DNA of 60,007 bases from NCBI RefSeq assembly GCF_001194135.2, contig NC_068999.1, forward strand, positions 6,939,260 to 6,999,266, given 5' to 3'. The stretch is from Octopus bimaculoides. Lineage: Eukaryota. Below, in pieces: positions 1-54,547 of the stretch; position 1 is the stretch's first letter; each line of letters begins with the position of its first letter. The position numbers and the translations under genes were made by a program. The notes under the pieces are model-generated. The model was not told the DNA's origin. It did no database searches and saw only the letters and a program-made list of their open reading frames with translations.

Positions 1-1152
1 CAGTGTATGGCATGTGTGTGTGTGTACTAAGAAATGAGTCTTTTGTCATCTAAAAACAAATGTGATGAATGAACAGTCTACTTGGGGATGACTGCCCAGT
101 TGCAAAACAATGCCTAAAATGTATTCATCCAACCCATGCTAGCTTGGAAAATATGGATGTAAGTGAATAAATGATTTCAGATATATATAGATGTGTGTGT
201 ATCAGGAATTGTCTTTATTGTGCTTTTTTTTCTTTTTTTTTTTTTTTTTTTTTTTTCTGGTCACTGCAACATTATCTCAGGATATAATATGTATAGGTGC
301 AGGGGTGGTTAAAATGTTGGCTTCCTAGCCAAGTGGTTGTGGTTTCAGTCCCTCCGTGTAGCACCTTGAGCTGACCATGGTTTTGTACATTTGTTTACAT
401 TTAATTCTCGGTCAAAAGCCATGGCATTGATGCAGTGTTCTGTCAGTATTTCACCTATCAATAGACAACCGGCTTTTGAGGGTTTTGGAATAAGGGATCC
501 TTTATTTGAAAGCTGGTAAGGGTTAGCACTAGGTAGGGTGTCCAGTTGTAAAACAATGCCTAAAATAGCATATTCATCTGACCAATGCGAGCAGAGGAGA
601 ATGGATATAAACGTCTTACATATGAAATGGGTTGTCTTTTTCTGCTGTGGTTTCCTGTTTTCCTTAAGATACTTTAAATGCTACTGTCTAAGATCTTAAC
701 GCAGGTGAACTTTACTGTTCCAAAGCATTAAGAAAAAGTTATAATTCATAAAGCTTTAAATTGTCTTTATAGATGTGGAGGACATTGTTGTGGTTCCCTG
801 TACTATCTGAATTGGTCAAAAATCTCTTTGATAGTAATGCAATAGGACTCTGATGAAGGCTAGAAGCCTGAAACTTCAGAGAAGTCACCGTCATCACTTG
901 AATAATAAATGTGTGTGTGTGTGTATATATATTCAAAGCTGATGATGATAGCTATGTGTATGTGTGTACATGCACACATATGTTCATAGTGATTGTTATA
1001 AGATACTTAGGGAACTGCCACAACTCTAAGATGAATTTATTGAACAGAAAGCTGCATTATTAAAGGAGAACTTGAAATAAACTGCTTAACACTCTCTTCA
1101 GTTACATTTTATTTTAATTTCTCTCTTTTGTCTTTCTGCTCGTTGACGTCAT

Positions 1153-1238
1153 CTGTTGCTAACGTTAAATATGATGATTATATGGATTCCCCTTCTGACT
1201 TCTTTGGAGACATTCCATTTTCTGATTGTTGGCAACAG
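1153..1238 (+). ncRNA. Box C/D snoRNA copy 1 in a CCT8 intron; predicted guide for 2'-O-methylation of 28S rRNA
   Basis: C box ATGATGA 1171-1177, D' CTGA 1195-1198, D CTGA 1222-1225. Flanking stem ctgttgctaac/gttggcaacag. The D' guide GGATTCCCCTT is complementary to the conserved 28S sequence AAGGGGAAUCC. Confidence 0.8.
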
Positions 1239-1528
1239 GGAATGCATGTGTGTGTGTGTGTGTGTACTAAGAAATAAGTCTTTTGTCATCTAAAAACATG
1301 CCGAATGAACAGTCTACTTGGGGATGACTGCCCAGTTGCAAAACAATGCCTAAAATGTATTCATCTAACCCATGCTAGCATGGAAAAATGGGTGTAAGTG
1401 AATAAATGATTTTAGATGTGAAATAAGTTACTTAACACTCTCTTCAGTTACATTTAATTTTAATAATTACAATTAATTTAAATGGTATGAAAATAATTTT
1501 AATTTCTCTTTCTCCTCGTTGAGGTCAT

Positions 1529-1617
1529 CTGTTGTTAATGTTAAATATGATGATGATTATATGGATTCCCCTTCTGACTTCTATGGAGACATTCCATTTT
1601 CTGATTGTTGGCAACAG
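1529..1617 (+). ncRNA. Box C/D snoRNA copy 2 (same family)
   Basis: Same boxes and an identical D' guide; the stem ctgttgttaat/gttggcaacag is retained through G-U pairs. Confidence 0.78.
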
Positions 1618-2020
1618 TGTATGGGATGCGTGTGTGTGTGTACTAAGAAATGAGTCTTTTGTCATCTAAAAACATGCCGAATGAACAGTCTACTTAAGGA
1701 TAGCTACCCAGTTGCAAAACAATGCCTAAAATGTATTCATCTAACCCATGCTAGCTTGGAATAATGGATGTAAGTGAATAAATGATTTTAGATATATATA
1801 GATATGTGTGTTTCAGGAATTGTCTTTTTTTTATTGTGCTTTTTTTTTGTTTACTTTAACCTTTTCGTTACCATATTTCTAACCAAAATACGCCCCTTAT
1901 GTGAAATAAGCTACTTTACACTCTCTTCAGTTACATTTAATTTTAATAATTACAATTAAATTAAATGCTATGAAAATAGTTTTAATTTCTCTCCTTTCTG
2001 TTTCTCCTCATTGACATCAT

Positions 2021-2105
2021 CTGTTGCTAACGTTAAATATGATGATTATATGGATTCCCCTTCTGACTTCTATGGAGATGTTCCATTTTCTGATTGCTGG
2101 CAACA
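2021..2105 (+). ncRNA. Box C/D snoRNA copy 3 (same family)
   Basis: Same boxes and an identical D' guide; the terminal stem has mismatches. Confidence 0.72.
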
Positions 2106-2487
2106 ATGTATGGGATGCGTGTGTGTGTGTATTAAGAAATGTCTTTTGTCATCTAAAAACAAATGTGACAAATGAACAGTCTATTTGGGGATGACTGCCC
2201 AGTTGCAAAACAATGCCTAAAATGTATTCATCTAACCCATGCTAGTGTGGAGAAATGGATGTAAGTGAATGTAACTCCTTTCTGGAAATTGTCTCATGAT
2301 TAACCCTTTCGTTAACATATTTCTAACCAAAATACTTGACTGGGTTTACAACACTTTCCTTTCTCTTTTGCCCAATTCAAACTTAGATTTTAACTCTTGG
2401 CATCCAGCTGGTTTGGACAATAACATCTTGCATGAGTTTTAATTGCTTGTTGAAGTTAGTTTTCAACTTTGTGTTTATTTGTTGCAG

Positions 2488-2580
2488 AGTATTCCTGGTT
2501 TAGAACAATATGCTATTAAAAAGTATGCGCAGTCCTTAGAAATTCTTCCTCAGTCTCTGGCTGAAAATACCGGAGCAAAG
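2488..2580 (+). CDS. CCT8: CCT8 (T-complex protein 1 subunit theta), internal exon: [31 protein letters not shown]
   Basis: AG at 2486-87, GTAAGT at 2581, 31 codons; matches the recalled CCT8 motif [27 protein letters not shown]. Confidence 0.95.
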
Positions 2581-2608
2581 GTAAGTGGGAATTTCTTTTT
2601 CTTTTTTT

Positions 2609-2652
<44 letters not shown>

Positions 2653-2771: not shown

Positions 2772-2843
2772 AGCCGAGAAGTTCTTTCCAAGTTGTATGC
2801 TTCTCATCAAGAAGGTAAACAGAATGTTGGTGTGAATATTGAG
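2772..2843 (+). CDS. CCT8: CCT8 exon: SREVLSKLYASHQEGKQNVGVNIE
   Basis: AG/GT bounded, 24 codons, phase 0; matches CCT8 EVISKLYAVHQEGNKNVGLDIE. Confidence 0.93.
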
Positions 2844-4157: not shown

Positions 4158-4274
4158 GATGTTGGTGGTGTTACGGATGCAGTAGAAAAAAATATTTTAG
4201 ATCTTTATACGAAGTTTTTCTGGATATTGAAGTTTGCCACTACAGCTGCTTGCACAGTGCTCAATGTTGACCAG
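4158..4274 (+). CDS. CCT8: CCT8 exon: DVGGVTDAVEKNILDLYTKFFWILKFATTAACTVLNVDQ
   Basis: AG/GT bounded, 39 codons; ends with the TVLxVDQ chaperonin motif. Confidence 0.93.
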
Positions 4275-4351
4275 GTAGGGATATATCTCTTGTTCTGTTG
4301 TTTCTTCTTGCTCTTTTCCTTTTTGTAATACATATGGATGTCGTTAATTAG

Positions 4352-7860: not shown

Positions 7861-8896
7861 GGAGAAAAAAAAAAAGTAATAACTTTTGTCACTATTCAGT
7901 TGATTAAAATGATTTAATGTCGGTCTTCCCTGCTGGTCAGTTCAAAGTCTACACCATGCTTCTGTGTTTGTTTTAACATGGTTTTATTTTGGTTGGATGG
8001 TCTTTTTTTTTTTTTTTTTTTTTTACATAAAACTAATTAATTTTTATTTTTCAAACTTCTCCACTTTTCACCTCTTCGTCAGGCAGGGAAGTACAGCACC
8101 CATGGCTTTTCACTCTCAGTTTTTACATAAAACTATTGAATACTTGCAGCAAAGCCTTTATCCTAAAAGTTGCTCATCTCACAAACTTACCTGTTCCACT
8201 GTCCTCAAATTCACCCTCTTGTAGCTTGAGGGGACTTCATCATCACCATCTCTCCTTTATATCTCCTCTACAGCAAAACACCTGCTCTTACCTCGGTGAA
8301 GGTGCATGGTTCAGTGGTTAGATCATTGGGCTCACAGTCATGATGTGGTAATTTCTATGTCCCAGAGTGGGTTGTGTAGTGTTTTCTTGAGCAAGACACT
8401 TTACTTCATGTTGCTCCAGTTTATTCATCTAGAAATGAGTTGTGACATCACTGGTGCCAAGCTGTATCGGCCCCTTTGCTTTTCCCATGGATAACATCAG
8501 TAGCATGGAGAGGGGAGGCTGGCATGCATGGCCAATGACTGGTCTTGCCTAAAACAACCTTGCCCGGACTTATACCTCAGAAGAAACTTTTTAGGTGCAA
8601 TCCCTTGGTCATTCATGTAGCAATCCTATAGGAAAACACGAAACTAGTAATTTCATCAAATTTGTTTTAAATATCAGAGAAAATTATGATTCTGCCAAAG
8701 AAATTTTATTTTTAAACTTAAAGTTTCTAAAAATTATGACTTTTGCAAAATCATAATGCCTGATATTTAAAACACACAAAGCCAAAGTCTCCAATCTAAA
8801 CTTTAATTTTAGTTTGAAAAGTTGAACGAATGTGCCTACACACAATACACAAAACATCTTTCCCAAAGACATTGTTTTTTTTCAAAAATCTCTTTA

Positions 8897-9495
8897 CTCT
8901 TTTACCTGTTTCAGTAATTTGACTGCGGCCATGATGGAGCACTGCCTTTAGTCGAGCAAATCGACCCCAGGACTTATTCTTTGTAAGCCTAGTACTTATT
9001 CTATCGGTCTTTTTTTACCGAACTGCTAAGTTACGGGGACATAAACACACCAGCATCGGTTGTCAAGCGATGTTAGGGGGACAAACACAGACACACAAAC
9101 ATATATATATATATATGGGAGAATGTACGAAAAAACAACAACAGACGAGGACAGGTGGTGTAAATAACAAAAGGATGTATTAGTATGACGCTCGGGAATA
9201 CGGAAAGTCTTTGACGTTTCGAGCTACGCTCTTCAACAGAAAGAATACGAAGACACAGAAAAAAAATTGAATAGTGTTCAGTCAACGGTCAATCATAATA
9301 ATAATAATATATATATATATATATATATATACTTATATACAACGGGCTTCTTCAGTTTTCGTCTACCAAATCCACTCACAAGGCTTTGAGCGGCCCGAGG
9401 CTATAGTAGAAGACACTTGCCCAAGTTGCCACACAGTGGGACTGAACCCGGAACCATGTGGTTGGTAAGCAAGCTACTTACCACACAGCCACTCC
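8897..9495 (-). mobile_element. tRNA-derived SINE whose central microsatellite contains a Penelope-like hammerhead-bearing insert
   Basis: Reverse complement of the SINE head and tail; insert at about 9120-9300. Confidence 0.75.
9208..9244 (-). ncRNA. Minimal type I hammerhead-ribozyme-like motif (Penelope type), core CUGUUGA
   Basis: Minus strand tcttt-CTGTTGA-A-GAGC-gta-GCTC-GAAA-CG-TC-aaaga: 5-bp stem I, 4-bp stem II, palindromic ACGU stem III. Confidence 0.55.
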
Positions 9496-11016: not shown

Positions 11017-12330
11017 TTATTTCCGTTTTTTGACCGATGGTCTTTCAAACACTTGTTTCATGCCACCACCCTTTGATGTATGGAATTTAAGATTTTGTGC
11101 AGTGTCGGCCAGCCAAGGAGAATCGAACTGAGTCGTGTCTTGGTCAACCAAATGCGTATATTTGGTTCGTCCAGAACGACCAAAATTCTTCACCTGCATG
11201 ACTTTAGGTAGAATAGTCTTATCAAAATGATCTTCCAAAGTTGGTGCTGAAAAGTCCCGCTTGTAAACAGTATCTTCTTCGTCCATGAAAAACGCACCCC
11301 TATGATAATATTTCTGAAGAAACTTATATCGTCCTTTAGGTGCTTTGTTGGGTATAATCTTAGGATTAGCTCGCTGTTCTGATCGTCTTTCTTCATCGTT
11401 CATGTTTCGTAATCGGTCGATCTCACCCTTTTCTTTCTCCAGAGCTTCTCGTTCCTCTCGGTCACGCTTCATGCGTTTCAACTCACGAACTTTCCAGGCT
11501 TCGTATTCTTCTTCATCATTTTCGTCACCCGTATCCACAGCATCACACGGATCTTCCTCTTTCGTCTCTTCTAATTCTTTTCTTGCCTCTGTTTCAATTA
11601 TCTTTAGCGTTTGTCGTCGTCTTTCTTCCACCATTCGTTTCGTTTCGATTTCTTGTTCGCGTGCCTTTAAGTCCTCCTTCTCTTTTTCTTGGATCGTGAT
11701 TCTGTCTTTCTTTCTAACGAAAACAGGCTTTAATCTAGGCCCAGTTTCTTCTTCAGAATCGGTATATTCCTCATATTCAGACGATTCTTCATCACTTTCG
11801 CCTTCAGATTTTTCATCTTCAAGGTCCATAACTTCTTCTTCCTCTTCTTCTTTTCTTTGTAAGGCCCGTTGCCTTAACAATTCTCTCCTTCTCTCGATTT
11901 CTTCTTCATCCAATTCTTCTTCTTCGCTACTTTCCTCTTCCTCTCGCCGGTGCCTGTCATCCATTTCATCTTCGGATGCTTCCATGACAACTTCTGGCTC
12001 AATAACTTCCCTACGATGTCTCGTAACCCGATCCTCCACATCGCTATCATCATCAATCGTTCTCTCTTTCAACCGTCTCAAACGAGGATCTTCGGATTTG
12101 TTATCAACAAGAACCGGTTTAGGAGCATCACGTACCTTCTTCGGTCCGAAATTGAACTCAACCTCTTCTTCTTCCTCGCTGCTAGAATCGGGAGCGTAGT
12201 CAGGTCTTTTACCCGTCACATACCGATTCACTTTCACCTTTTGCATCGTGATGTCTCCCTTTTCATTCTTAATCGTCACGGCCCCTGCCGTCGACTGGAT
12301 CGGGATCGTGTTATTCACTCGTCCACTCAT
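11017..12330 (-). CDS. MFAP1: Microfibrillar-associated protein 1 (spliceosomal B-complex protein), single-exon CDS, 437 aa
   Basis: Uninterrupted ORF with the hallmark motifs IQSTAGAV, RYVTGKRPDYA, PRLKPVFVRKKDRIT, YEAWKVRELKR, FLQKYYHRGAFF, KNFGRSGRTKYTHLVDQDTT. Confidence 0.98.
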   Translation of the reverse strand: MSGRVNNTIPIQSTAGAVTIKNEKGDITMQKVKVNRYVTGKRPDYAPDSSSEEEEEVEFNFGPKKVRDAPKPVLVDNKSEDPRLRRLKERTIDDDSDVEDRVTRHRREVIEPEVVMEASEDEMDDRHRREEEESSEEEELDEEEIERRRELLRQRALQRKEEEEEEVMDLEDEKSEGESDEESSEYEEYTDSEEETGPRLKPVFVRKKDRITIQEKEKEDLKAREQEIETKRMVEERRRQTLKIIETEARKELEETKEEDPCDAVDTGDENDEEEYEAWKVRELKRMKRDREEREALEKEKGEIDRLRNMNDEERRSEQRANPKIIPNKAPKGRYKFLQKYYHRGAFFMDEEDTVYKRDFSAPTLEDHFDKTILPKVMQVKNFGRSGRTKYTHLVDQDTTQFDSPWLADTAQNLKFHTSKGGGMKQVFERPSVKKRK

Positions 12331-15059: not shown

Positions 15060-15428
15060 TCTTTTACTTGTTTCAGTCATTTGACTGCAGCCATGCTGGA
15101 GCACCGCTTTTAGTCGAGGAAATCGACCCCAGGACTTATCTTTTGTAAGCCTAGTACTTATTCTATCGGTCACTTTGCCGAACTGCTAAGTTACAGGGAC
15201 GTAAACACACCAGCATCGGTTGTCAAGCGATGTTGGGGGTGGGACAAACACACACACATATACATATATACGACGGGCTTCTTTCAGTTTCCGTCTACCA
15301 AATCCACTCACAGGGCTTTGGTCGGCCGGAGGCTATAGTAGAAGGCACTTGCCCAAGGTGCCACGCAGTGGGACTGAACCCGGAACCATGTAGTTGGTAA
15401 GCAAGCTACTTACCGCACAGCCACTCTT
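15060..15428 (-). mobile_element. tRNA-derived SINE, near full length
   Basis: Reverse complement of the same SINE family consensus. Confidence 0.8.
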
Positions 15429-15768
15429 TAACGTTTATCGAATTTTCTTTTTTTCAATCTGCCTGGAAAGGCACGGAGATTAAGAATGTAGGGAAAATAA
15501 CATTTTAATTTCAAATTTTTTATGAAAAATTCCAAAATTGTCCACCCCCCTCACCACCTCATTCCGCTGTCTAAAAGTGAAAATGAACGGCTGTTTTGTC
15601 CGTTTGCGCATGCGTAGATATATAGTGAACCATCAAAAGGTCACGCATGTGAAGCCCTCACCAGAAAATTCGATATGCTAAAAATAACAGTTAAATGTTT
15701 GTGTGTACGCGCGCGCAACAATTTCTACAGCTTATCCGAATAAACAGAGAAAGTACACAGAAATAGTT

Positions 15769-18385: not shown

Positions 18386-19072
18386 ATGAATCATTCTCAG
18401 GATGGTCTCCGCCAACGGCACAAGAAGAAATCAATCATAAAATCAGCAATCTCTTCGACATCACAGAAATTTCAAAGTCTTTCTTTGAAAACTAAATGCC
18501 TCTTTGTTCTCCTTGCTTTCACACTTCTTGTTGCGTATATAATAATGCTCTGGTATCAGGTGACAAACAGGCTCCGTGAATTTACCTACATACAAGCTGA
18601 TACATGCCCTGCATGTTATGGCTCTAGCATATGTCTTGCTCTATTCAGGGGTGATGCCCACTTCACTGGCATGCTTTCAAAGATTCGGTCTTTTGATTAT
18701 TTAAATTCTAAGAATTTCCATTACGGCAAATTAAACGGCAAAGAGGTTGTTTTAAAAAAACTAGTAGCAGACGATGTGTTGAAAGACTTAGACGACAAAA
18801 TCTGCCGTAGTGCTCGAAGGACTCCTGGTTGTGACGTTGCGAGGGTGGTTGTTAAAGCTGATTTTGTCTCTCAAGTTCGGCAACATGAATTGGAAGTGGA
18901 TCATCTGAAAGGTGTTAACGATATGTTTTACTGTCCATCTCGGCGCCTTCTTGATCGACTACTGAAATATTACCTGGAGAAGTACTCGTACGAGGCACCA
19001 TATTTCTACGCAGTTGATAAAATACAGATTTTGATAACAGCTATGATTAGTTCGGAGCCATTAATGCTACAG
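18386..19072 (+). CDS. DIPK2A: DIPK2A/C3orf58 (DIA1)-family divergent kinase, first coding exon (229 codons; N-terminal TM, CPACYGSSIC, VVLKKL, SEPLMLQ)
   Basis: Acceptor at 18305-06, ATG 18386, donor GTAATC at 19073; motifs match recalled DIPK2A CPACFGTSWC, VVLKRL, NPEPLVLQ. Paralog 2A versus 2B cannot be resolved by eye. Confidence 0.85.
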
Positions 19073-19908
19073 GTAATCTTTCGTCTTTTATTTGTTCTAC
19101 TCCTTTTAGTCACTGGACCACAACCATGCTGGGGGCCCCATCTTGAAGGGCTTAGTCAAGCATATCAACCCTAGCTAGGGACTTAGCCTATCTTCCCTTT
19201 CACTGAACTAGTAAGTTACAGGGCTGTAAACAAACCAACACCAGTTCTCGAGCAGTGGGAGCAACAAAAATAAACACAGATACACACATATATCATTTAT
19301 CTTTTTCCTTGTTACAGTCATTGAATTGTGGCCATGCTGGAATACCCCTGTACTTATCCTTCTTCAAGCCTGATCCTTATGCTGTTGGTCCCTTTTACCG
19401 AACTGCTAAGTTGTGGGAATGTAGAACCACCAACACTGGTTGTCAGATATTGGTAGGGAACAAACACAAACTCACACATACACACAGAGGATGGGCTTTT
19501 TTCAGTTTCCATCTATCAAATCCACTCACAAGGCTTTGGTCAACTCAAGGTCATAGTACAAGACACTTGCCCACAGTGCTATGCAGTGGGACTGAACCCA
19601 GAACCATGTGGTTGGGAAGCAGGCTTTTTACCACATAACCATTCCTGCACCTATATGGTTCACCTTTTATTTTCTTTCTATACTGTTTTGTCAATGGTTG
19701 CTATTTTGGATAAATGTTGTGAATTCCATACCTAATTAGCAATAGATTCTTTAGTAATTCCACCCTACATTGCCAAGCATATTTTTCTCTTTAAATGTCT
19801 ACTTGTTTATAGTCCACTTACATTTTTCGTTAAAGGTAGGTCCTTTCAGCAGGTGATGTAACATACATTGTCTCTTTCTATGTCTGGCGGGAAGCATTCT
19901 TTTGTTAT

Positions 19909-20804: not shown

Positions 20805-21510
20805 ATCTTTTACTTGTTCCAGTCATTGCCTTGAATTCTTAGTCGATATGAATCAAGCCCAGTACCTTTTTTGAGCTTGGTACTTGCTCTATCGGTTTCT
20901 TTTGCCGAACTGCTAACTTATGGGGATGCAAACGCATCAACACTGGTTGTCAAGCAGTGGGAGACAAAAAGGGACGAACACACACATATGTACAATGAGC
21001 TTCTTTCAGTTTCCATCTACCAAATCCACTCACAAGGGCTTTGGTTGGCTCAAGGTTACAGTAGAAGACACTTGCCCAAGGTGCTGCAGAGTGGGACTGA
21101 ACCCAGAATCAAGTGGTTGAGAAGCAAATTTCTTACCACACAACCATCCCTGCACCTCCCTCCCCAATAGGTCCAGGAGTGGCCATGGTTCCAGGTTCAG
21201 TCCCATTGCGTGGCACCTTGGAAAAGTGTCTTCTATAACCTTGGGCCGACCAAAGCCTTGTGAGTGGATTTAGTAGATGGAAACTGAAAGAAGCCCGTCA
21301 CACACACATATGTGTGTGTTTTTGTCCCCCTACCATTGCTTGACAACCGATGCTGGTGTGTTTACATCCCTGTAACTTAGCAGTTCAATAAAAGAGACCA
21401 ATAGAATAAGTCCTAGGCTTACAAAGGATAAGTCCTGTGGTCAGTTTGTTCGACTAAAGGCAGTGCTCCAGCATGGCCGCAGTCAAATGACTGAAACAAG
21501 TAAAGGAATA
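20805..21510. mobile_element. Head-to-head inverted pair of tRNA-derived SINEs
   Basis: Minus copy about 20805-21165 and plus copy about 21180-21510 of the same family. Confidence 0.85.
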
Positions 21511-38690: not shown

Positions 38691-39248
38691 CAGAACCATG
38701 TGGTTGGTAAGCAAGCTACTTACCACACAGCCACTGTTGTAAAAAAAAAAAGTATTGTTCAATCCACTGAACTCCTAAAATTGCAATACAATAAACAACA
38801 AGAAATGAAATTGAACATTGAAATGTGTCTAGTACTCTTTTACCCATTTGACTGCGGCCATGCTGGAGCACCGCCTTTAGTCAAACAAATCGTCTCCAGG
38901 ACTTATTTTTTGTAAGCCTAGTGCTTATTTTATCGGTTTCTTTTCCCAAACAGCTAAGTTACGGGGACGTAAACACACCAACATCGGTTGTCAAGCGATG
39001 GTGGTGGTGGTGGGGGGACAAACACACACATATGTACACAACGGGCTTCTTTCATTTTTTGTGTACCATATCCACTCACAAGGCTTTAGTTGGCCCGAGG
39101 CTATAGTAGAAGACACTTGCCCAAGGTGCCACACAGTGGGACTGAACCCGGAACCATGTGGTCGGAAAGCAAGTTTCTTATCACAGGGCCACTCCTGTGT
39201 CTATGTATGATCTTCAGACCATACTTGTGGTTTGTGTCATTTACTTAC

Positions 39249-41910: not shown

Positions 41911-42284
41911 CTGTTTTTTTTTTTCTCCTTTAAACTTTTAGCATTTAAAGCAGCCATATCCAGCCTCTCACACTTACCCTACAATATCATTCTAGAAATA
42001 AACAATTACATCATTGAAATCTCAAAGCTGTGAGACAATCATCATCAACACTTAGCATGAGGCCAGCAATTCTAGGGGCAAGTGGTTAGTCAATTACATT
42101 GACCACAGAGGGATAAAAGCAAAGCTAACCTCAGCTGGATTTGAACTCAGAATGTAAAGAGAGAAAAGAAATACTGCAGGGCGTTTATCTCATCACCCTA
42201 ACAAGTCTGTCAGCTCACTGCCTCAATAATAATAATGATGATAAAAACAAACAATATATATATATATATATATATACATCTTTT

Positions 42285-42654
42285 ACTCTTTTACTTGTTT
42301 CAGTCATTTGACTGCGGCCATGCTGGAGCACTGCCTTTTAGTCGAGCAAATCGACCCCAGGACTTATTCTTTGGAAGCCTAGTACTTATTCTATCGATCT
42401 CTTTTGCCGAACCGCTAAGTTACGGGGACGTAAACACACCAGCATCGGTTGTCAAGCGATGTTGGGGGACAGACACAAACATACACACATATATACGACA
42501 GGCTTCTTCCAGTTTCCGTCTACCAAATCCACTCACAAGGCTTTGGTCGGCCCAAGGCTATAGTAGAAGACACTTGCCCAAGGTGCCACGCAGTGGGAAT
42601 GAACCCGGAACCATGTGGTTGGTAAGCAAGCTACTTACCACACAGCCACTCCTG
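42285..42654 (-). mobile_element. tRNA-derived SINE, near full length, abutting a gap
   Basis: Reverse complement of the family consensus. Confidence 0.8.
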
Positions 42655-52005: not shown

Positions 52006-54177
52006 CTTGGACATGAAATACATGGCAAAAAATTTTTTAAATTACCCCTTTTTTTTTTTTAATATACTTGGACATTCCCATTGCTCAATGGATGTTTCTG
52101 GACACTTTTTGATTACATTTTTCCCTTTGCTGGGTTCATTCTTTGAAGAGGTCCCTTCATTGGTCTTTGCCATGCTGCCTTGACACTTTGAGAACATCCT
52201 TTTTGCTATGGTAACTTCATTCTTTGAAGATGTCTCCCCCCCCCATTTTTTTTTGTTCATGACATATTTTTATTAGGGTTGTCTTAATATGCATCATACT
52301 TTTGAAGTGATGTGTCTTTTAAAAGCTGAAGCAAGATGGGAAATCAATGATGGGTTAATTGTTTTTTTTTTTAACCCCTATTTTCTTTTTATTTCATATA
52401 ATTCAGTTTTACACACAATAATGTGCTTTTACACTTTTGTCTGTTTTCGATTTTCTTTTTTCCTTTTAATATAAAAAAAATTTTCACCTTAATGTACTCT
52501 TGTCTAACCCATGAAATCATATTAATACAGACAGAGCTGTGTGGTTAAGGAAGCTCACTTTGCAACCACCTGGTTTCAGGTTAAATCTCACTCAGCAGCT
52601 CCTTAACCCTGTAGCATTCAGATTACTCTATGAAGTATGTTTATTTATTCAAATTGGCTTGAATTGCTCATGCATTATCTCATTTCTAGATTTCAATTAT
52701 GCGATTTCATATTTTTACAACGAAATTGTAGGGTATGAATGAGAGACCAAATCCAGTTGGTTTGAACATAACACAAATAGAGTATTTAACCCTGGATTGA
52801 CCAATGCCTTGTGAGTGAATTTGGTAGACAGAAACTGTGTAGAAGCCCATCATGTATAAATATATGTGTGTGTGTTTTGTTTTTCTCCCCATCATTTAAC
52901 AGCCAGTGTTGGTTTATTTATATCCTTGTAACTTAGCAATTTGGCAGAAGCTGATAGAATAAGTACCAAACTTAAAAATAACAAAAATTGTTGAATGGTT
53001 GATTCGTTTGATTACACTCTTCAGGGCAGTGCCCCAGTATGGCCACAATCCAATGAATGAAATAAGTACAAGAAAGAAAAGATGTTTCTTCTTCACATTT
53101 TTTTTGTATAATTGTTTTCCTTGTAAAAATGTAAAATAAAACTTTATTAGCATTTATATTCTGTACAGCTGATCTTTTATTGTCTGAATATTGGTTAAAA
53201 TAGCTCCACTCCTGGTTGAGTTATTAGATGTGGTGTAAGACATGATTGTAAAATAAAAAAAATAAAAAGTGTATTCCCCAATGATATTATATGCAGTTTT
53301 TATATTTTGTATTATAAAAAACAAAAAATGAAAAACACAACCTCATCCATGTCCTGGTGGCATGATAGAAACAGAAAAATAAAATAATGTAAACCAATAA
53401 ATTGTTTTGGTATTTACTCATTCCTTTTAAAATTTCTTCCTTGCATCATGTTTGCAGTTCCACTCCCTCTCCTAGCTGAGAGGTCTACGTCTCACAAGTT
53501 ACTTAGTGATCCTGATGTTGTCAGTGTCGTGTAAAAAGCACCCAGTACACTCTGTAAAGTGGTTGATGTTAGGAGGGGTATCCAGCTGTAGAAATCATGC
53601 CAAAGCAGAGAAATGGAGCCTGGTGTAATTCTCTGGCTTGCCAGTTCCTCTCAAATCATCCAACCCATGCCAGCATGGGACACAGATGTTAAATGATTAT
53701 AAGCATCAACCTCTGTTACTCTGTGGTTAGCTTTTGCAGAAGTTGTCCTCCTTGGAACAGTTTGAGGTATTTTGGCTGCTTATTCAGTGTTGCTGATTTA
53801 TTTGGCATCAGACATTTTAATGTGCCTCTTGTTCTCTCTCTCTCTCTTTGTGAGCATATTCCTCTTTATGTGTTTGAGGAGAAGTGTTTATGTCAACTAT
53901 GTTCAGCTAACCTTTAACACTGTAAGTGCATCATGTCCATATGAGTTTTCTCCCTTGTAGTAATAGGGCAGGGGGAAAAGTTCTAGAGAAAATGCAACGT
54001 GCTAAAGGTGAAAAATTCTAATGCCTCTCTCTCTTTCATATATATATATATATATATATAAGAGAAAGAGGCATTAGAATTACATATATATATGTATTTA
54101 TTTTCTCTTAGTTAATAATTAACTCCGACAAAATAAATTGGTTAATAGATACCAGGGTAGCAAAGATNNNNNNNNNN

Positions 54178-54253
<76 letters not shown>

Positions 54254-54547
54254 CACACGTGTGTGTCTTTGTGTTAGTCCCCATGATTGGTTGATAACTG
54301 CTGTTGGTTTGTTTACGTCCCCACAGCTTAAAAGCTTGGCATAAGTACCAGACTTTAAAAATAAGTCCTGGGGGGTCGATTTGTTTGACTAAAACCCTTC
54401 AAGGCGGTGCCCCAGTATGGCCACAGTTCAATACACTGAAGCAAGTAAATGACAAAAGATATGTATTTAAATTTTTTATTTCTCTCTAAGAATACAAAGG
54501 CTTGCTGAAAGTTTCTGTTTTTACATAACTTCATATTCTCTTGTTTA

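What the first reader, a model, noticed from the sequence alone, without database searches (positions are those of the whole stretch)
1153..2105. Tandem cluster of box C/D snoRNAs in one CCT8 intron, predicted to guide a conserved 28S Gm
Seen: three copies with C box ATGATGA, D' and D CTGA boxes and an ~11-bp external stem. The window opens on 'cag', which looks like the stem end of a fourth copy just upstream. The 11-nt D' guide GGATTCCCCTT is invariant while the flanks have diverged. Established: 28S rRNA contains GACAAGGGGAAUCCGACUG, and the +5 rule places the methyl group on the third G of GGGG. Inference: this equals human 28S Gm3606/3627 (numbering from memory). Several snoRNAs in a single intron depart from the usual one-per-intron arrangement in vertebrates and imply endonucleolytic processing or recent dosage amplification.
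Basis: partly seen in the sequence, partly recalled or inferred. Interest (0 to 1): 0.72.

Follow-up and report, generated by a model that had tools for sequence, protein, structure and literature searches.

The report
Tandem SNORD101-type snoRNA genes in octopus CCT8
An intron of the octopus chaperonin gene CCT8 carries several tandem copies of a small guide RNA that is predicted to direct methylation of one conserved G in the large ribosomal RNA; it belongs to a family already known in vertebrates (SNORD101) and plants (snoR60), so the guide is ordinary and only the many-copies-per-intron layout is unusual.

Summary
Three complete box C/D units lie at 1153-1238, 1529-1617 and 2021-2106 (+ strand). 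A fourth ends at window base 3. All sit in the CCT8 (TCP-1 theta) intron upstream of exon 2488-2580. The assembly is Octopus bimaculoides.

The D' guide GGATTCCCCTT forms 11 Watson-Crick pairs with AAGGGGAAUCC of eukaryotic LSU rRNA. The +5 rule selects the third G.

- The copies belong to a known Rfam clan, CL00074 (snoR60/SNORD101). They are the best hits but fall below the curated cut-offs. Knockdown of mouse Snord101 abolishes a 28S Gm.
- Read depth in DNA runs indicates about 9-12 copies per genome, not four.
- Argonauta hians CCT8 holds ten homologous copies, five in the orthologous intron and five in the preceding one.

In Argonauta the snoRNA copies are about 97% alike while their flanks are essentially unrelated. 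Between the two genera only the snoRNA aligns within the intron, and the terminal stem shows one compensatory change.

Expression as a roughly 70-nt RNA and methylation in octopus could not be tested.

Verdict: a real, conserved snoRNA gene array. It is a new member of a known family with a multi-copy intronic organisation that has precedents in Drosophila and rice.

The parts
1..231 (+). Tail of an upstream repeat unit (unit 0). Bases 1-3 'cag' are the last bases of the 3' stem arm of a fourth snoRNA copy that lies just outside the window.
   Evidence: Aligns at 89.5% to unit 2 positions 195-427. A contig of run X2 bridges a snoRNA-like stretch to window 13-134.
1075..1420 (+). Tandem unit 1: snoRNA copy 1, a (GT)n run and a SINE-like tail.
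1153..1238 (+). snoRNA copy 1 with its external stem. Stem arms 1153-1163 and 1228-1238. Predicted mature RNA about 1164-1233. C box 1171-1177, D' guide 1184-1194, D' box 1195-1198, C'-like UGGAGA 1205-1210, D box 1222-1225.
   Evidence: (snoR60, 29.3 bits)
1421..1902 (+). Tandem unit 2.
1529..1617 (+). snoRNA copy 2. Stem arms 1529-1539 and 1607-1617. Predicted mature RNA about 1540-1612. C box 1550-1556, with an extra ATG giving ATGATGATGA from 1547. D' guide 1563-1573, D' box 1574-1577, C'-like 1584-1589, D box 1601-1604.
   Evidence: (snoR60, 30.7 bits)
1903..2340 (+). Tandem unit 3.
2021..2106 (+). snoRNA copy 3. Stem arms 2021-2031 and 2096-2106, weakened by two substitutions. Predicted mature RNA about 2032-2101. 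C box 2039-2045, D' guide 2052-2062, D' box 2063-2066, C'-like 2073-2078, D box 2090-2093.
   Evidence: (snoR60, 28.7 bits)
2488..2580 (+). CCT8 exon (SIPGLEQYAIKK...TGAK) immediately downstream of the host intron. The 3' splice site AG is at 2486-2487, 394 nt after the D box of copy 3.
   Evidence: Splice junction and depth. TCP-1 theta match.
2772..2843 (+). Next CCT8 exon (SREVLSKLYASHQEGKQNVGVNIE).
4158..4275 (+). Following CCT8 exon (DVGGVTDAVEK...NVDQ).

Best explanation
These are tandemly amplified, intron-encoded box C/D snoRNA genes of the SNORD101/snoR60 type, hosted by CCT8.

Shown by sequence:
- Each unit has the elements a C/D snoRNP needs: a C box AUGAUGA, a D box CUGA, a perfect internal D' box, a conserved C'-like UGGAGA and a 5-bp terminal stem.
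- In O. bimaculoides there is also an 11-13-bp external stem in the flanking intron.

Inferred mechanism:
- The host pre-mRNA is transcribed at a high level.
- Each unit folds through its flanking stem. This allows snoRNP assembly without the usual position about 50 nt upstream of the branch point; the copies here sit 394-1262 nt from the 3' splice site.
- Spacers are removed by exonucleases. Endonucleolytic cuts between units are also needed if more than one RNA is to be recovered per intron.
- The mature RNA of about 70 nt pairs its D' guide 5'-(U)GGAUUCCCCUU-3' with LSU rRNA 5'-AAGGGGAAUCC(G)-3'.
- Fibrillarin then 2'-O-methylates the third G of GGGG. That residue is the probable counterpart of human 28S Gm3606/3627 and mouse Gm3283.

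The D guide (CAUUCCAUUUU) has no convincing rRNA target and is not conserved, so the RNA probably works as a single-guide snoRNA.
For: **Motifs and target**
- The motif architecture is present three times, with 0 expected.
- A snoscan-like control found guide plus D' plus C box only at these three sites. None of 200 shuffles produced one.
- The guide is the best site in three complete rDNA operons, and the fifth nucleotide is the third G. The target motif lies in LSU rRNA.

**Family**
- The best Rfam families out of 4227 are snoR60 for the window copies (28.7-30.7 bits, full-length model, identical 12-nt guide) and SNORD101 or snoR60 for the Argonauta copies. Both belong to clan CL00074.
- Knockdown of mouse Snord101 abolishes 28S-G3283 methylation (PMC11863803).
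- The published antisense oligonucleotide (ASO) against Snord101 maps, with one mismatch, to a unique LSU site that overlaps the octopus guide site.
- Human Gm3606 was detected by RiboMeth-seq and mass spectrometry.

**Conservation**
- Argonauta hians CCT8 has 10 copies with identical C box, guide, D', C'-like and D elements.
- Their snoRNA parts are 96.8% alike. Flanks are about 61% alike, against a 57% baseline for unrelated sequence.
- Only the snoRNAs, one exon and a SINE fragment align between the two species' CCT8 regions.
- In the terminal stem 62 of 65 cells pair, with one A-U to U-A compensatory change.
- Long external stems are reported to make C/D assembly independent of splicing (PMC5519232).
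Against: - No RNA evidence for a discrete 70-nt species. The available runs behave like poly(A) or long-fragment libraries and show only intron-level coverage over the copies. No miRNA-type library could be listed.
- Rfam scores are below the gathering cut-offs (40 and 47 bits).
- Within the window alone the snoRNA is not significantly better conserved than its flanks (p = 0.10).
- Copy 3 has a damaged external stem and a broken terminal pair.
- Xenopus is reported to lack Gm3627, so the site is not universal.
Confidence: 0.85

Rival explanations
1. The array is mostly redundant. One or a few copies make the functional snoRNA. The others, including some in the window, are neutral by-products of tandem duplication and are decaying into pseudogenes.
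For: Whole units, including a (GT)n run and a SINE fragment, were duplicated together and are about 90% alike, so the duplication was segmental and not selected for the snoRNA alone. Constraint within the window is not significant. Copy 3 has lost two external-stem pairs and one terminal-stem pair.
Against: In Argonauta all ten copies keep intact boxes and guide at about 97% identity while their flanks are unrelated. That pattern implies selection or gene conversion acting on every copy. In the window the C box, guide, D' box and D box are intact in all three copies.
Confidence: 0.3
2. The RNA is a real C/D snoRNP but does not methylate this G in octopus. It could act only as an rRNA-folding chaperone at this site, or mainly on another RNA through either guide.
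For: Some snoRNAs with canonical pairing to rRNA produce no methylation, such as SNORD12C (PMC5027482). SNORD101 was also reported to contact tRNAs (PMC10576143). Methylation at this site is absent in Xenopus.
Against: The D' box is a perfect CUGA directly next to an 11-14-bp duplex, which is the canonical geometry for methylation. The related mouse Snord101 is required for methylation at its 28S site. The D guide is not conserved between the genera (7 of 11) and has no good rRNA match.
Confidence: 0.08
3. This is not a snoRNA. The box-like motifs and the rRNA complementarity are chance features of a repeated or transposable element.
For: The units contain a dispersed SINE-like tail and microsatellites. 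RNA evidence is absent.
Against: The core is present at about 10 copies per genome, not at the far greater depth of the neighbouring (GT)n run and SINE-like tail (several thousand against about 50 for single-copy sequence). None of 200 shuffles reproduces guide plus boxes. The element is conserved in the same gene in another octopod family, with a compensatory stem change. The hits to SNORD101 and snoR60 argue the same way.
Confidence: 0.02

Closest known systems
SNORD101 (U101; Rfam RF00186, clan CL00074), vertebrates
   Same: Box C/D snoRNA of about 73 nt with a 5-bp terminal stem. Its 5' guide (consensus UUGUCGGAUACCCCUUC) addresses the same LSU segment. It is the best Rfam hit for the Argonauta copies. 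Mouse Snord101 is required for 28S-G3283 methylation.
   Different: Scores are below the cut-off (26-29 bits against 47). The vertebrate consensus has an A where the octopod guides have U, which gives one mismatch to the rRNA. It also has CACU where the octopods have a perfect CUGA D' box. From memory, the human gene is a single copy in an RPS12 intron; here there are about 10 copies in CCT8 introns.
snoR60 (Rfam RF00339, clan CL00074), plants
   Same: The 12-nt guide GGAUUCCCCUUC is identical, as are the overall length and box order. It is the best Rfam hit for all three window copies, matched over the full model.
   Different: Scores are 28.7-30.7 bits against a cut-off of 40. In the plant consensus the guide is followed by CAGg, not CUGA. 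The second half of the molecule (C' box, D guide) differs. The plant target position could not be checked in the paper library.
Intronic snoRNA gene clusters of Drosophila and rice
   Same: Several snoRNA genes sit in one intron of a host gene, unlike the one-per-intron rule of vertebrates (PMC3089462 and its reference to Liang et al. 2002).
   Different: As described in that paper, the Drosophila clusters are mainly H/ACA. Here the cluster is a homogeneous array of a single C/D species, spread over two adjacent introns of a protein-coding gene in Argonauta.
Mammalian intronic C/D snoRNAs with long external stems
   Same: Complementary intron sequences flank the C and D boxes, and the snoRNA lies far from the optimal position near the branch point. 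External stems are reported to make assembly independent of splicing (PMC5519232).
   Different: The processing route has not been shown for these octopod RNAs. The external stem differs in sequence and register between Octopus (11-13 bp) and Argonauta (a bipartite stem of 5 bp plus 5-7 bp).

Membership tests
Box C/D snoRNA | C box RUGAUGA near the 5' end and D box CUGA near the 3' end | tested here: met
   AUGAUGA and CUGA are present in all 3 window copies and all 10 Argonauta copies.
Box C/D snoRNA | A terminal stem that brings the C and D boxes together | tested here: met
   The 5-bp stem next to the boxes pairs in 62 of 65 cells, with one compensatory A-U to U-A change between genera. An additional 12-13-bp external stem is present in copies 1 and 2 (p about 0.001-0.007).
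Box C/D snoRNA | Internal D' and C' boxes | tested here: met
   D' is a perfect CUGA. The C'-like box is degenerate (UGGAGA) but invariant in all 13 copies of both genera.
Box C/D snoRNA | An antisense element of at least 10 nt abutting D or D', with the target nucleotide paired to the fifth position | tested here: met
   There are 11 Watson-Crick pairs plus 1 G-U to LSU AAGGGGAAUCC(G), and 14 bp in Argonauta. The fifth position pairs with the third G.
Box C/D snoRNA | Accumulates as a discrete RNA of about 60-90 nt in a fibrillarin snoRNP | not testable with these tools
   Only long-fragment RNA runs were available, and coverage over the copies equals intron background. No small-RNA run could be listed.
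Box C/D snoRNA | 2'-O-methylation present at the predicted rRNA nucleotide in this organism | not testable with these tools
   No RiboMeth-seq data were available.
Rfam clan CL00074 (SNORD101 RF00186 / snoR60 RF00339) | Bit score at or above the family's gathering cut-off | tested here: not met
   snoR60 scored 28.7-30.7 against 40. For the Argonauta copies SNORD101 scored 26-29.1 against 47. The window had no hit at gathering thresholds.
Rfam clan CL00074 (SNORD101 RF00186 / snoR60 RF00339) | Best-matching families over the full model length | tested here: met
   All 13 copies have a CL00074 family as their top snoRNA hit, matched over model positions 1-72 or 1-73. E-values are 9e-4 to 0.12.
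Rfam clan CL00074 (SNORD101 RF00186 / snoR60 RF00339) | Same antisense element and rRNA target | tested here: met
   The guide is identical to the snoR60 consensus (12 of 12) and differs at one position from the SNORD101 consensus. The Snord101 antisense oligonucleotide (ASO) sequence maps to the same LSU site.
Intronic snoRNA gene cluster | Two or more snoRNA genes within one intron of a host gene | tested here: met
   At least four copies lie in the intron upstream of exon 2488-2580. No exon is present in 1-2487: the upstream exon is absent from the window, and no splice junctions fall there in RNA reads. In Argonauta each of two adjacent introns holds 5 copies.
Intronic snoRNA gene cluster | More than one snoRNA released from the same intron by endo- and exonucleolytic processing | not testable with these tools
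   No precursor or small-RNA data were available.

The most novel reading that the evidence does not exclude
Octopods maintain, by selection or gene conversion, a polycistronic array of about ten identical SNORD101-type snoRNAs that spans an exon and fills two adjacent CCT8 introns. The flanking stems make each unit an independent assembly and cleavage module that does not depend on splicing. Several snoRNAs would then be released per host transcript. That would be a plant- or yeast-like polycistronic processing mode operating inside an animal protein-coding gene, used to raise the dose of one rRNA methylation guide.
Probability: 0.3. Interest if true: 0.5.

Novelty: new member of a known kind. 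Interest (0 to 1): 0.35.

Why it matters
- **An ancient guide-target pair.** The finding ties together three things so far treated separately: plant snoR60, vertebrate SNORD101 and an octopod snoRNA. SNORD101 was long called an orphan and was only recently shown to be needed for a 28S Gm in mouse. The octopod snoRNA has a perfect D' box and an 11-14-bp guide to the same rRNA segment. This suggests the pairing is ancient and that the vertebrate guide is a degenerate version. It may also explain why the guide for human Gm3606 was variously assigned to SNORD31 and SNORD12.
- **A natural system for snoRNA processing.** The locus offers arrays of identical C/D snoRNAs in introns far from the branch point, with external stems. 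It could be used to study splicing-independent snoRNP assembly and the processing of multi-snoRNA introns in an animal.
- **An annotation gap.** Rfam gathering thresholds miss these genes.

None of this changes the current picture of snoRNA biology.

Tried and rejected
- **Rfam at gathering thresholds on the whole window:** nothing. At permissive thresholds the only other hits are microsatellite artefacts such as mir-297.
- **Tandem Repeats Finder:** missed the array because the units differ in length.
- **RNA evidence:**
  - Contigs from four runs guessed to be RNA, and three raw-read runs, gave only intron-level depth over the copies.
  - A search for miRNA-type libraries listed none.
- **Other species in the same study** (organisms B and C) were too distant; even the exons did not map.
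- **Upstream sequence of the fourth copy from DNA unitigs:** no loose ends were shown.
- **CCT8 orthologues by protein search:**
  - A 94-aa query gave nothing.
  - A 178-aa query returned only short partial proteins and no cephalopods.
- **MFAP1 as a synteny anchor** worked for Argonauta. For O. vulgaris, O. sinensis, Sepia pharaonis and an ENA contig, CCT8 lies beyond the 10-kb flank. The same limit prevented reading upstream of the window in O. bimaculoides.
- **D guide:** no convincing rRNA target.
- **RNAalifold on the Argonauta copies** predicted an internal hairpin with no covariation. I do not regard it as meaningful.
- **Literature searches** for snoR60's plant target and for position labels such as G3627 mostly returned noise.

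Full report
**1. What is in the sequence**

The string ATGATGA-N6-GGATTCCCCTT-CTGA occurs three times in the window, at 1171, 1550 and 2039 on the + strand. Dinucleotide shuffles gave none. Each occurrence is followed 23 nt later by a second CTGA and is bracketed by complementary arms.

| Element | Copy 1 | Copy 2 | Copy 3 |
|---|---|---|---|
| 5' stem arm | 1153-1163 | 1529-1539 | 2021-2031 |
| C box | 1171-1177 | 1550-1556 | 2039-2045 |
| D' guide | 1184-1194 | 1563-1573 | 2052-2062 |
| D' box | 1195-1198 | 1574-1577 | 2063-2066 |
| D box | 1222-1225 | 1601-1604 | 2090-2093 |
| 3' stem arm | 1228-1238 | 1607-1617 | 2096-2106 |

The flanking helix has 13 contiguous pairs in copy 1 and 12 in copy 2, counting G-U pairs. 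Only 29 and 142 of 20000 shuffles of the flanks did as well. In copy 3 it has only 8 pairs (2489 of 20000), because two substitutions interrupt it.

The copies sit in tandem units of about 350-490 bp: 1075-1420, 1421-1902 and 1903 to about 2340. Each unit also contains a (GT)n run and the tail of a dispersed SINE-like element.

Window bases 1-231 are the tail of a further unit and begin exactly at the 'cag' that closes the 3' arm. A contig of run X2, which the tool guessed to be RNA, joins a snoRNA-like stretch to window 13-134.

**2. Host gene and organism**

RNA reads show a GT..AG junction joining 2580 to 2772, with strong coverage of 2488-2580 and 2772-2843. The encoded 55 residues match TCP-1 theta (CCT8) residues 430-483 at E = 2e-18. 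Other CCT subunits reach only about 1e-6.

The exon preceding 2488 is not in the window. The host intron therefore extends beyond the window start.

The D boxes lie 394, 883 and 1262 nt from the 3' splice site. This is far from the position about 50 nt upstream of the branch point that human C/D snoRNAs prefer (PMC5519232).

An exact-protein look-up of the neighbouring MFAP1 gene places the window on CM046619.1 of assembly GCA_001194135.2. From memory, that assembly is Octopus bimaculoides.

**3. Target**

In all three complete rDNA loci tested it lies inside RF02543, eukaryotic LSU rRNA, at about position 2085-2115.

A scan of whole operons with the D' guide finds this site as the best one. 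It gives 11 Watson-Crick pairs plus one G-U, and the fifth position pairs with the third G of GGGG.

As a control I scanned the window for any CTGA preceded by an 11-mer complementary to rRNA. I found the three copies and at most one unrelated site without a C box. In 200 shuffles there was about one such site on average, and none with a C box.

The D guide has no convincing rRNA match. Presence of the target in octopus is inferred from its conservation across eukaryotes.

**4. Which family**

At curated thresholds Rfam reports nothing.

At permissive thresholds all three copies match snoR60 (RF00339, clan CL00074) over the full model. Scores are 28.7-30.7 bits against a cut-off of 40, and E is 0.0009-0.003 in a 2.5-kb search. 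The identical guide GGAUUCCCCUUC sits in the same register.

The Argonauta homologues (section 6) match SNORD101 (RF00186, same clan) at 26-29 bits against a cut-off of 47, or snoR60 at 24-25 bits. The SNORD101 consensus guide is UUGUCGGAUACCCCUUC.

The literature adds the following.
- SNORD101 was regarded as an orphan (PMC7668251).
- In mouse cells Snord101 chimeras map to 28S, and antisense knockdown abolishes methylation of 28S-G3283 (PMC11863803).
- The sequence of the published antisense oligonucleotide (ASO) matches a unique LSU site with one mismatch, and that site overlaps the octopus guide site.
- Human 28S-Gm3606 was found by RiboMeth-seq (score 0.80) and by mass spectrometry (PMC5027482; PMC8393311).
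- The guide for Gm3606 was earlier assigned to SNORD31 or SNORD12.
- Xenopus is reported to lack Gm3627.

The identity of mouse G3283, human G3606/3627 and the third G rests on my own numbering from memory (yeast G2123 plus an offset of 1483). It is an inference, not a test.

**5. Copy number**

In four DNA runs the contig covering the snoRNA core is about 8-17 times deeper than neighbouring single-copy contigs, and most ratios fall between 9 and 12.

| Run | Core contig | Core depth | Single-copy depth |
|---|---|---|---|
| X1 | 2039-2095 | 462 | 36-56 |
| X4 | 2039-2095 | 524 | 50-60 |
| X9 | 2039-2085 | 387 | 39-47 |
| X3 | 1550-1589 | 115 | 6.5-12 |

This points to roughly 9-12 copies per genome, so most lie outside the window. 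The neighbouring (GT)n run and SINE-like tail are far deeper (several thousand), so the snoRNA is not part of a high-copy element.

**6. Conservation across species**

Within the window the test has little power. Variable columns are 7 of 86 in snoRNA plus stem against 37 of 241 in the flanks (p = 0.10).

I used the intronless MFAP1 gene (11017-12330, minus strand) as a synteny anchor. With it I obtained the orthologous region of Argonauta hians (L123). CCT8 lies next to MFAP1 there as well.

The Argonauta locus carries ten copies of a homologous C/D snoRNA on the CCT8 strand.
- Five copies lie in the intron between exons 21278-21162 and 18081-18001.
- Five lie in the next intron, between 18081-18001 and 16255-16160. 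This second intron is the one orthologous to the window's.

Identical in all 13 copies of both genera:
- the C box
- the 11-nt guide
- the D' box plus the following CTT
- a C'-like TGGAGA
- the D box

Different between the genera:
- the spacer between the C box and the guide (6 against 10 nt)
- the D-guide region (7 of 11 identical)
- the flanks

The Argonauta guide extends to 14 nt (GUUGGAUUCCCCUU). One copy has GUCGG, which gives 14 Watson-Crick pairs.

A sensitive blastn between window 1-2600 and the Argonauta CCT8 region aligns only the snoRNA copies, exon 2488-2580 and a short SINE fragment.

Among the ten Argonauta copies the 74-nt snoRNA is 96.8% identical on average. The 80 nt on either side are 60-62% identical, against a 57% baseline for unrelated sequence.

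The 5-bp terminal stem next to the boxes pairs in 62 of 65 cells. One pair changes from A-U in Octopus to U-A in Argonauta, which is a compensatory change. Two other pairs switch between G-U and Watson-Crick.

The fossil lower bound used for the Argonauta-Octopus split is about 29 Ma (PMC12682272).

For O. vulgaris, O. sinensis and Sepia pharaonis, CCT8 lies beyond the retrievable 10-kb flank.

**7. Mechanism**

Shown: the complete sequence architecture of a methylation-guide C/D snoRNA, its location in the intron of a highly expressed gene, and its evolutionary constraint.

Inferred:
- Assembly with the core proteins uses the terminal and external stems. External stems are reported to make assembly splicing-independent.
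- Release from the intron is by exonucleolytic trimming. Endonucleolytic cuts between units are needed if more than one RNA per intron is to be recovered.
- The third G of AAGGGGAAUCC in 28S is methylated.

Copies within each species share species-specific features (section 6). This indicates either independent amplification or concerted evolution of an ancestral array.

In Argonauta, pairs of copies in different introns share their flanks (20035 with 16982, and 18404 with 16421). Blocks have therefore been copied from one intron to the other across an exon.

**8. What could not be tested**

Expression of a discrete small RNA could not be tested. Nor could methylation in octopus, the octopus 28S sequence, the part of the array upstream of the window, or other cephalopods.

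**9. Verdict**

The finding is real and its interpretation is essentially right. The multi-copy intronic organisation has precedents in Drosophila and rice. Interest is moderate.

Noticed in passing
window 11017-12330 (-): An intronless 437-aa ORF encodes MFAP1 (Pfam PF06991, E = 1.4e-74). The gene order PIP49/DIPK-like, then MFAP1, then CCT8 is the same in O. bimaculoides and Argonauta hians.
   Followed up: partly
window 18386-19174 (+): A 262-aa ORF with no Pfam hit of its own. It aligns by blastn to the Argonauta gene whose product carries PF12260 (PIP49_C). It is probably one exon of a DIPK/FAM69-like gene.
   Followed up: partly
window 280-640 (+); tails at 20-180, 1262-1420, 1636-1800, 2126-2290: A dispersed SINE-like element. 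Its 3' tail of about 80 nt (CCAGTTGyAAAACAATGCCTAAAAT...) is embedded downstream of every snoRNA copy, and a related piece sits in another Argonauta CCT8 intron. ARAGORN finds no tRNA in it.
   Followed up: partly
window 1539: DNA runs X4 and X9 and run X13 show C where the window has T, in contigs about five times single-copy depth. C would turn a G-U pair of the copy-2-type external stem into G-C. This is either a polymorphism or the sequence of unseen copy-2-like paralogues.
   Followed up: no
window 1239-1266, 1618-1642, 2107-2130; L123 downstream of most copies: A GT-rich microsatellite directly follows the 3' stem arm of the snoRNA in Octopus and in most Argonauta copies. The snoRNA plus (GT)n module may therefore be ancestral.
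   Followed up: no
window 2592-2650 and 224-256: Very long poly-T tracts of 59 and 33 nt. The first starts 12 nt after the 5' splice site of the next CCT8 intron. It attracts thousands of partly matching reads in every run.
   Followed up: no
window about 26.7 kb, 42.6-43.0 kb, 55.3-56.3 kb: Runs of N (assembly gaps) inside the window, seen as X-filled ORFs.
   Followed up: no
window 8890-9490, 15060-15430, 19300-19650, 20850-21510, 38840-39200, 42280-42650: At least six copies of a dispersed repeat of about 370 bp that is also abundant in the O. vulgaris and O. sinensis loci. The hits to mir-297, mir-466 and mir-3149 at 905-980, 4487, 33877, 54010-54260, 55270, 57931 and 59938 are TG/TA microsatellite artefacts.
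   Followed up: no
L123 16371-20865 (-): In Argonauta, snoRNA copies in two different introns share their flanks (20035 with 16982, and 18404 with 16421). This indicates block duplication or gene conversion across the 81-nt exon 18081-18001.
   Followed up: partly
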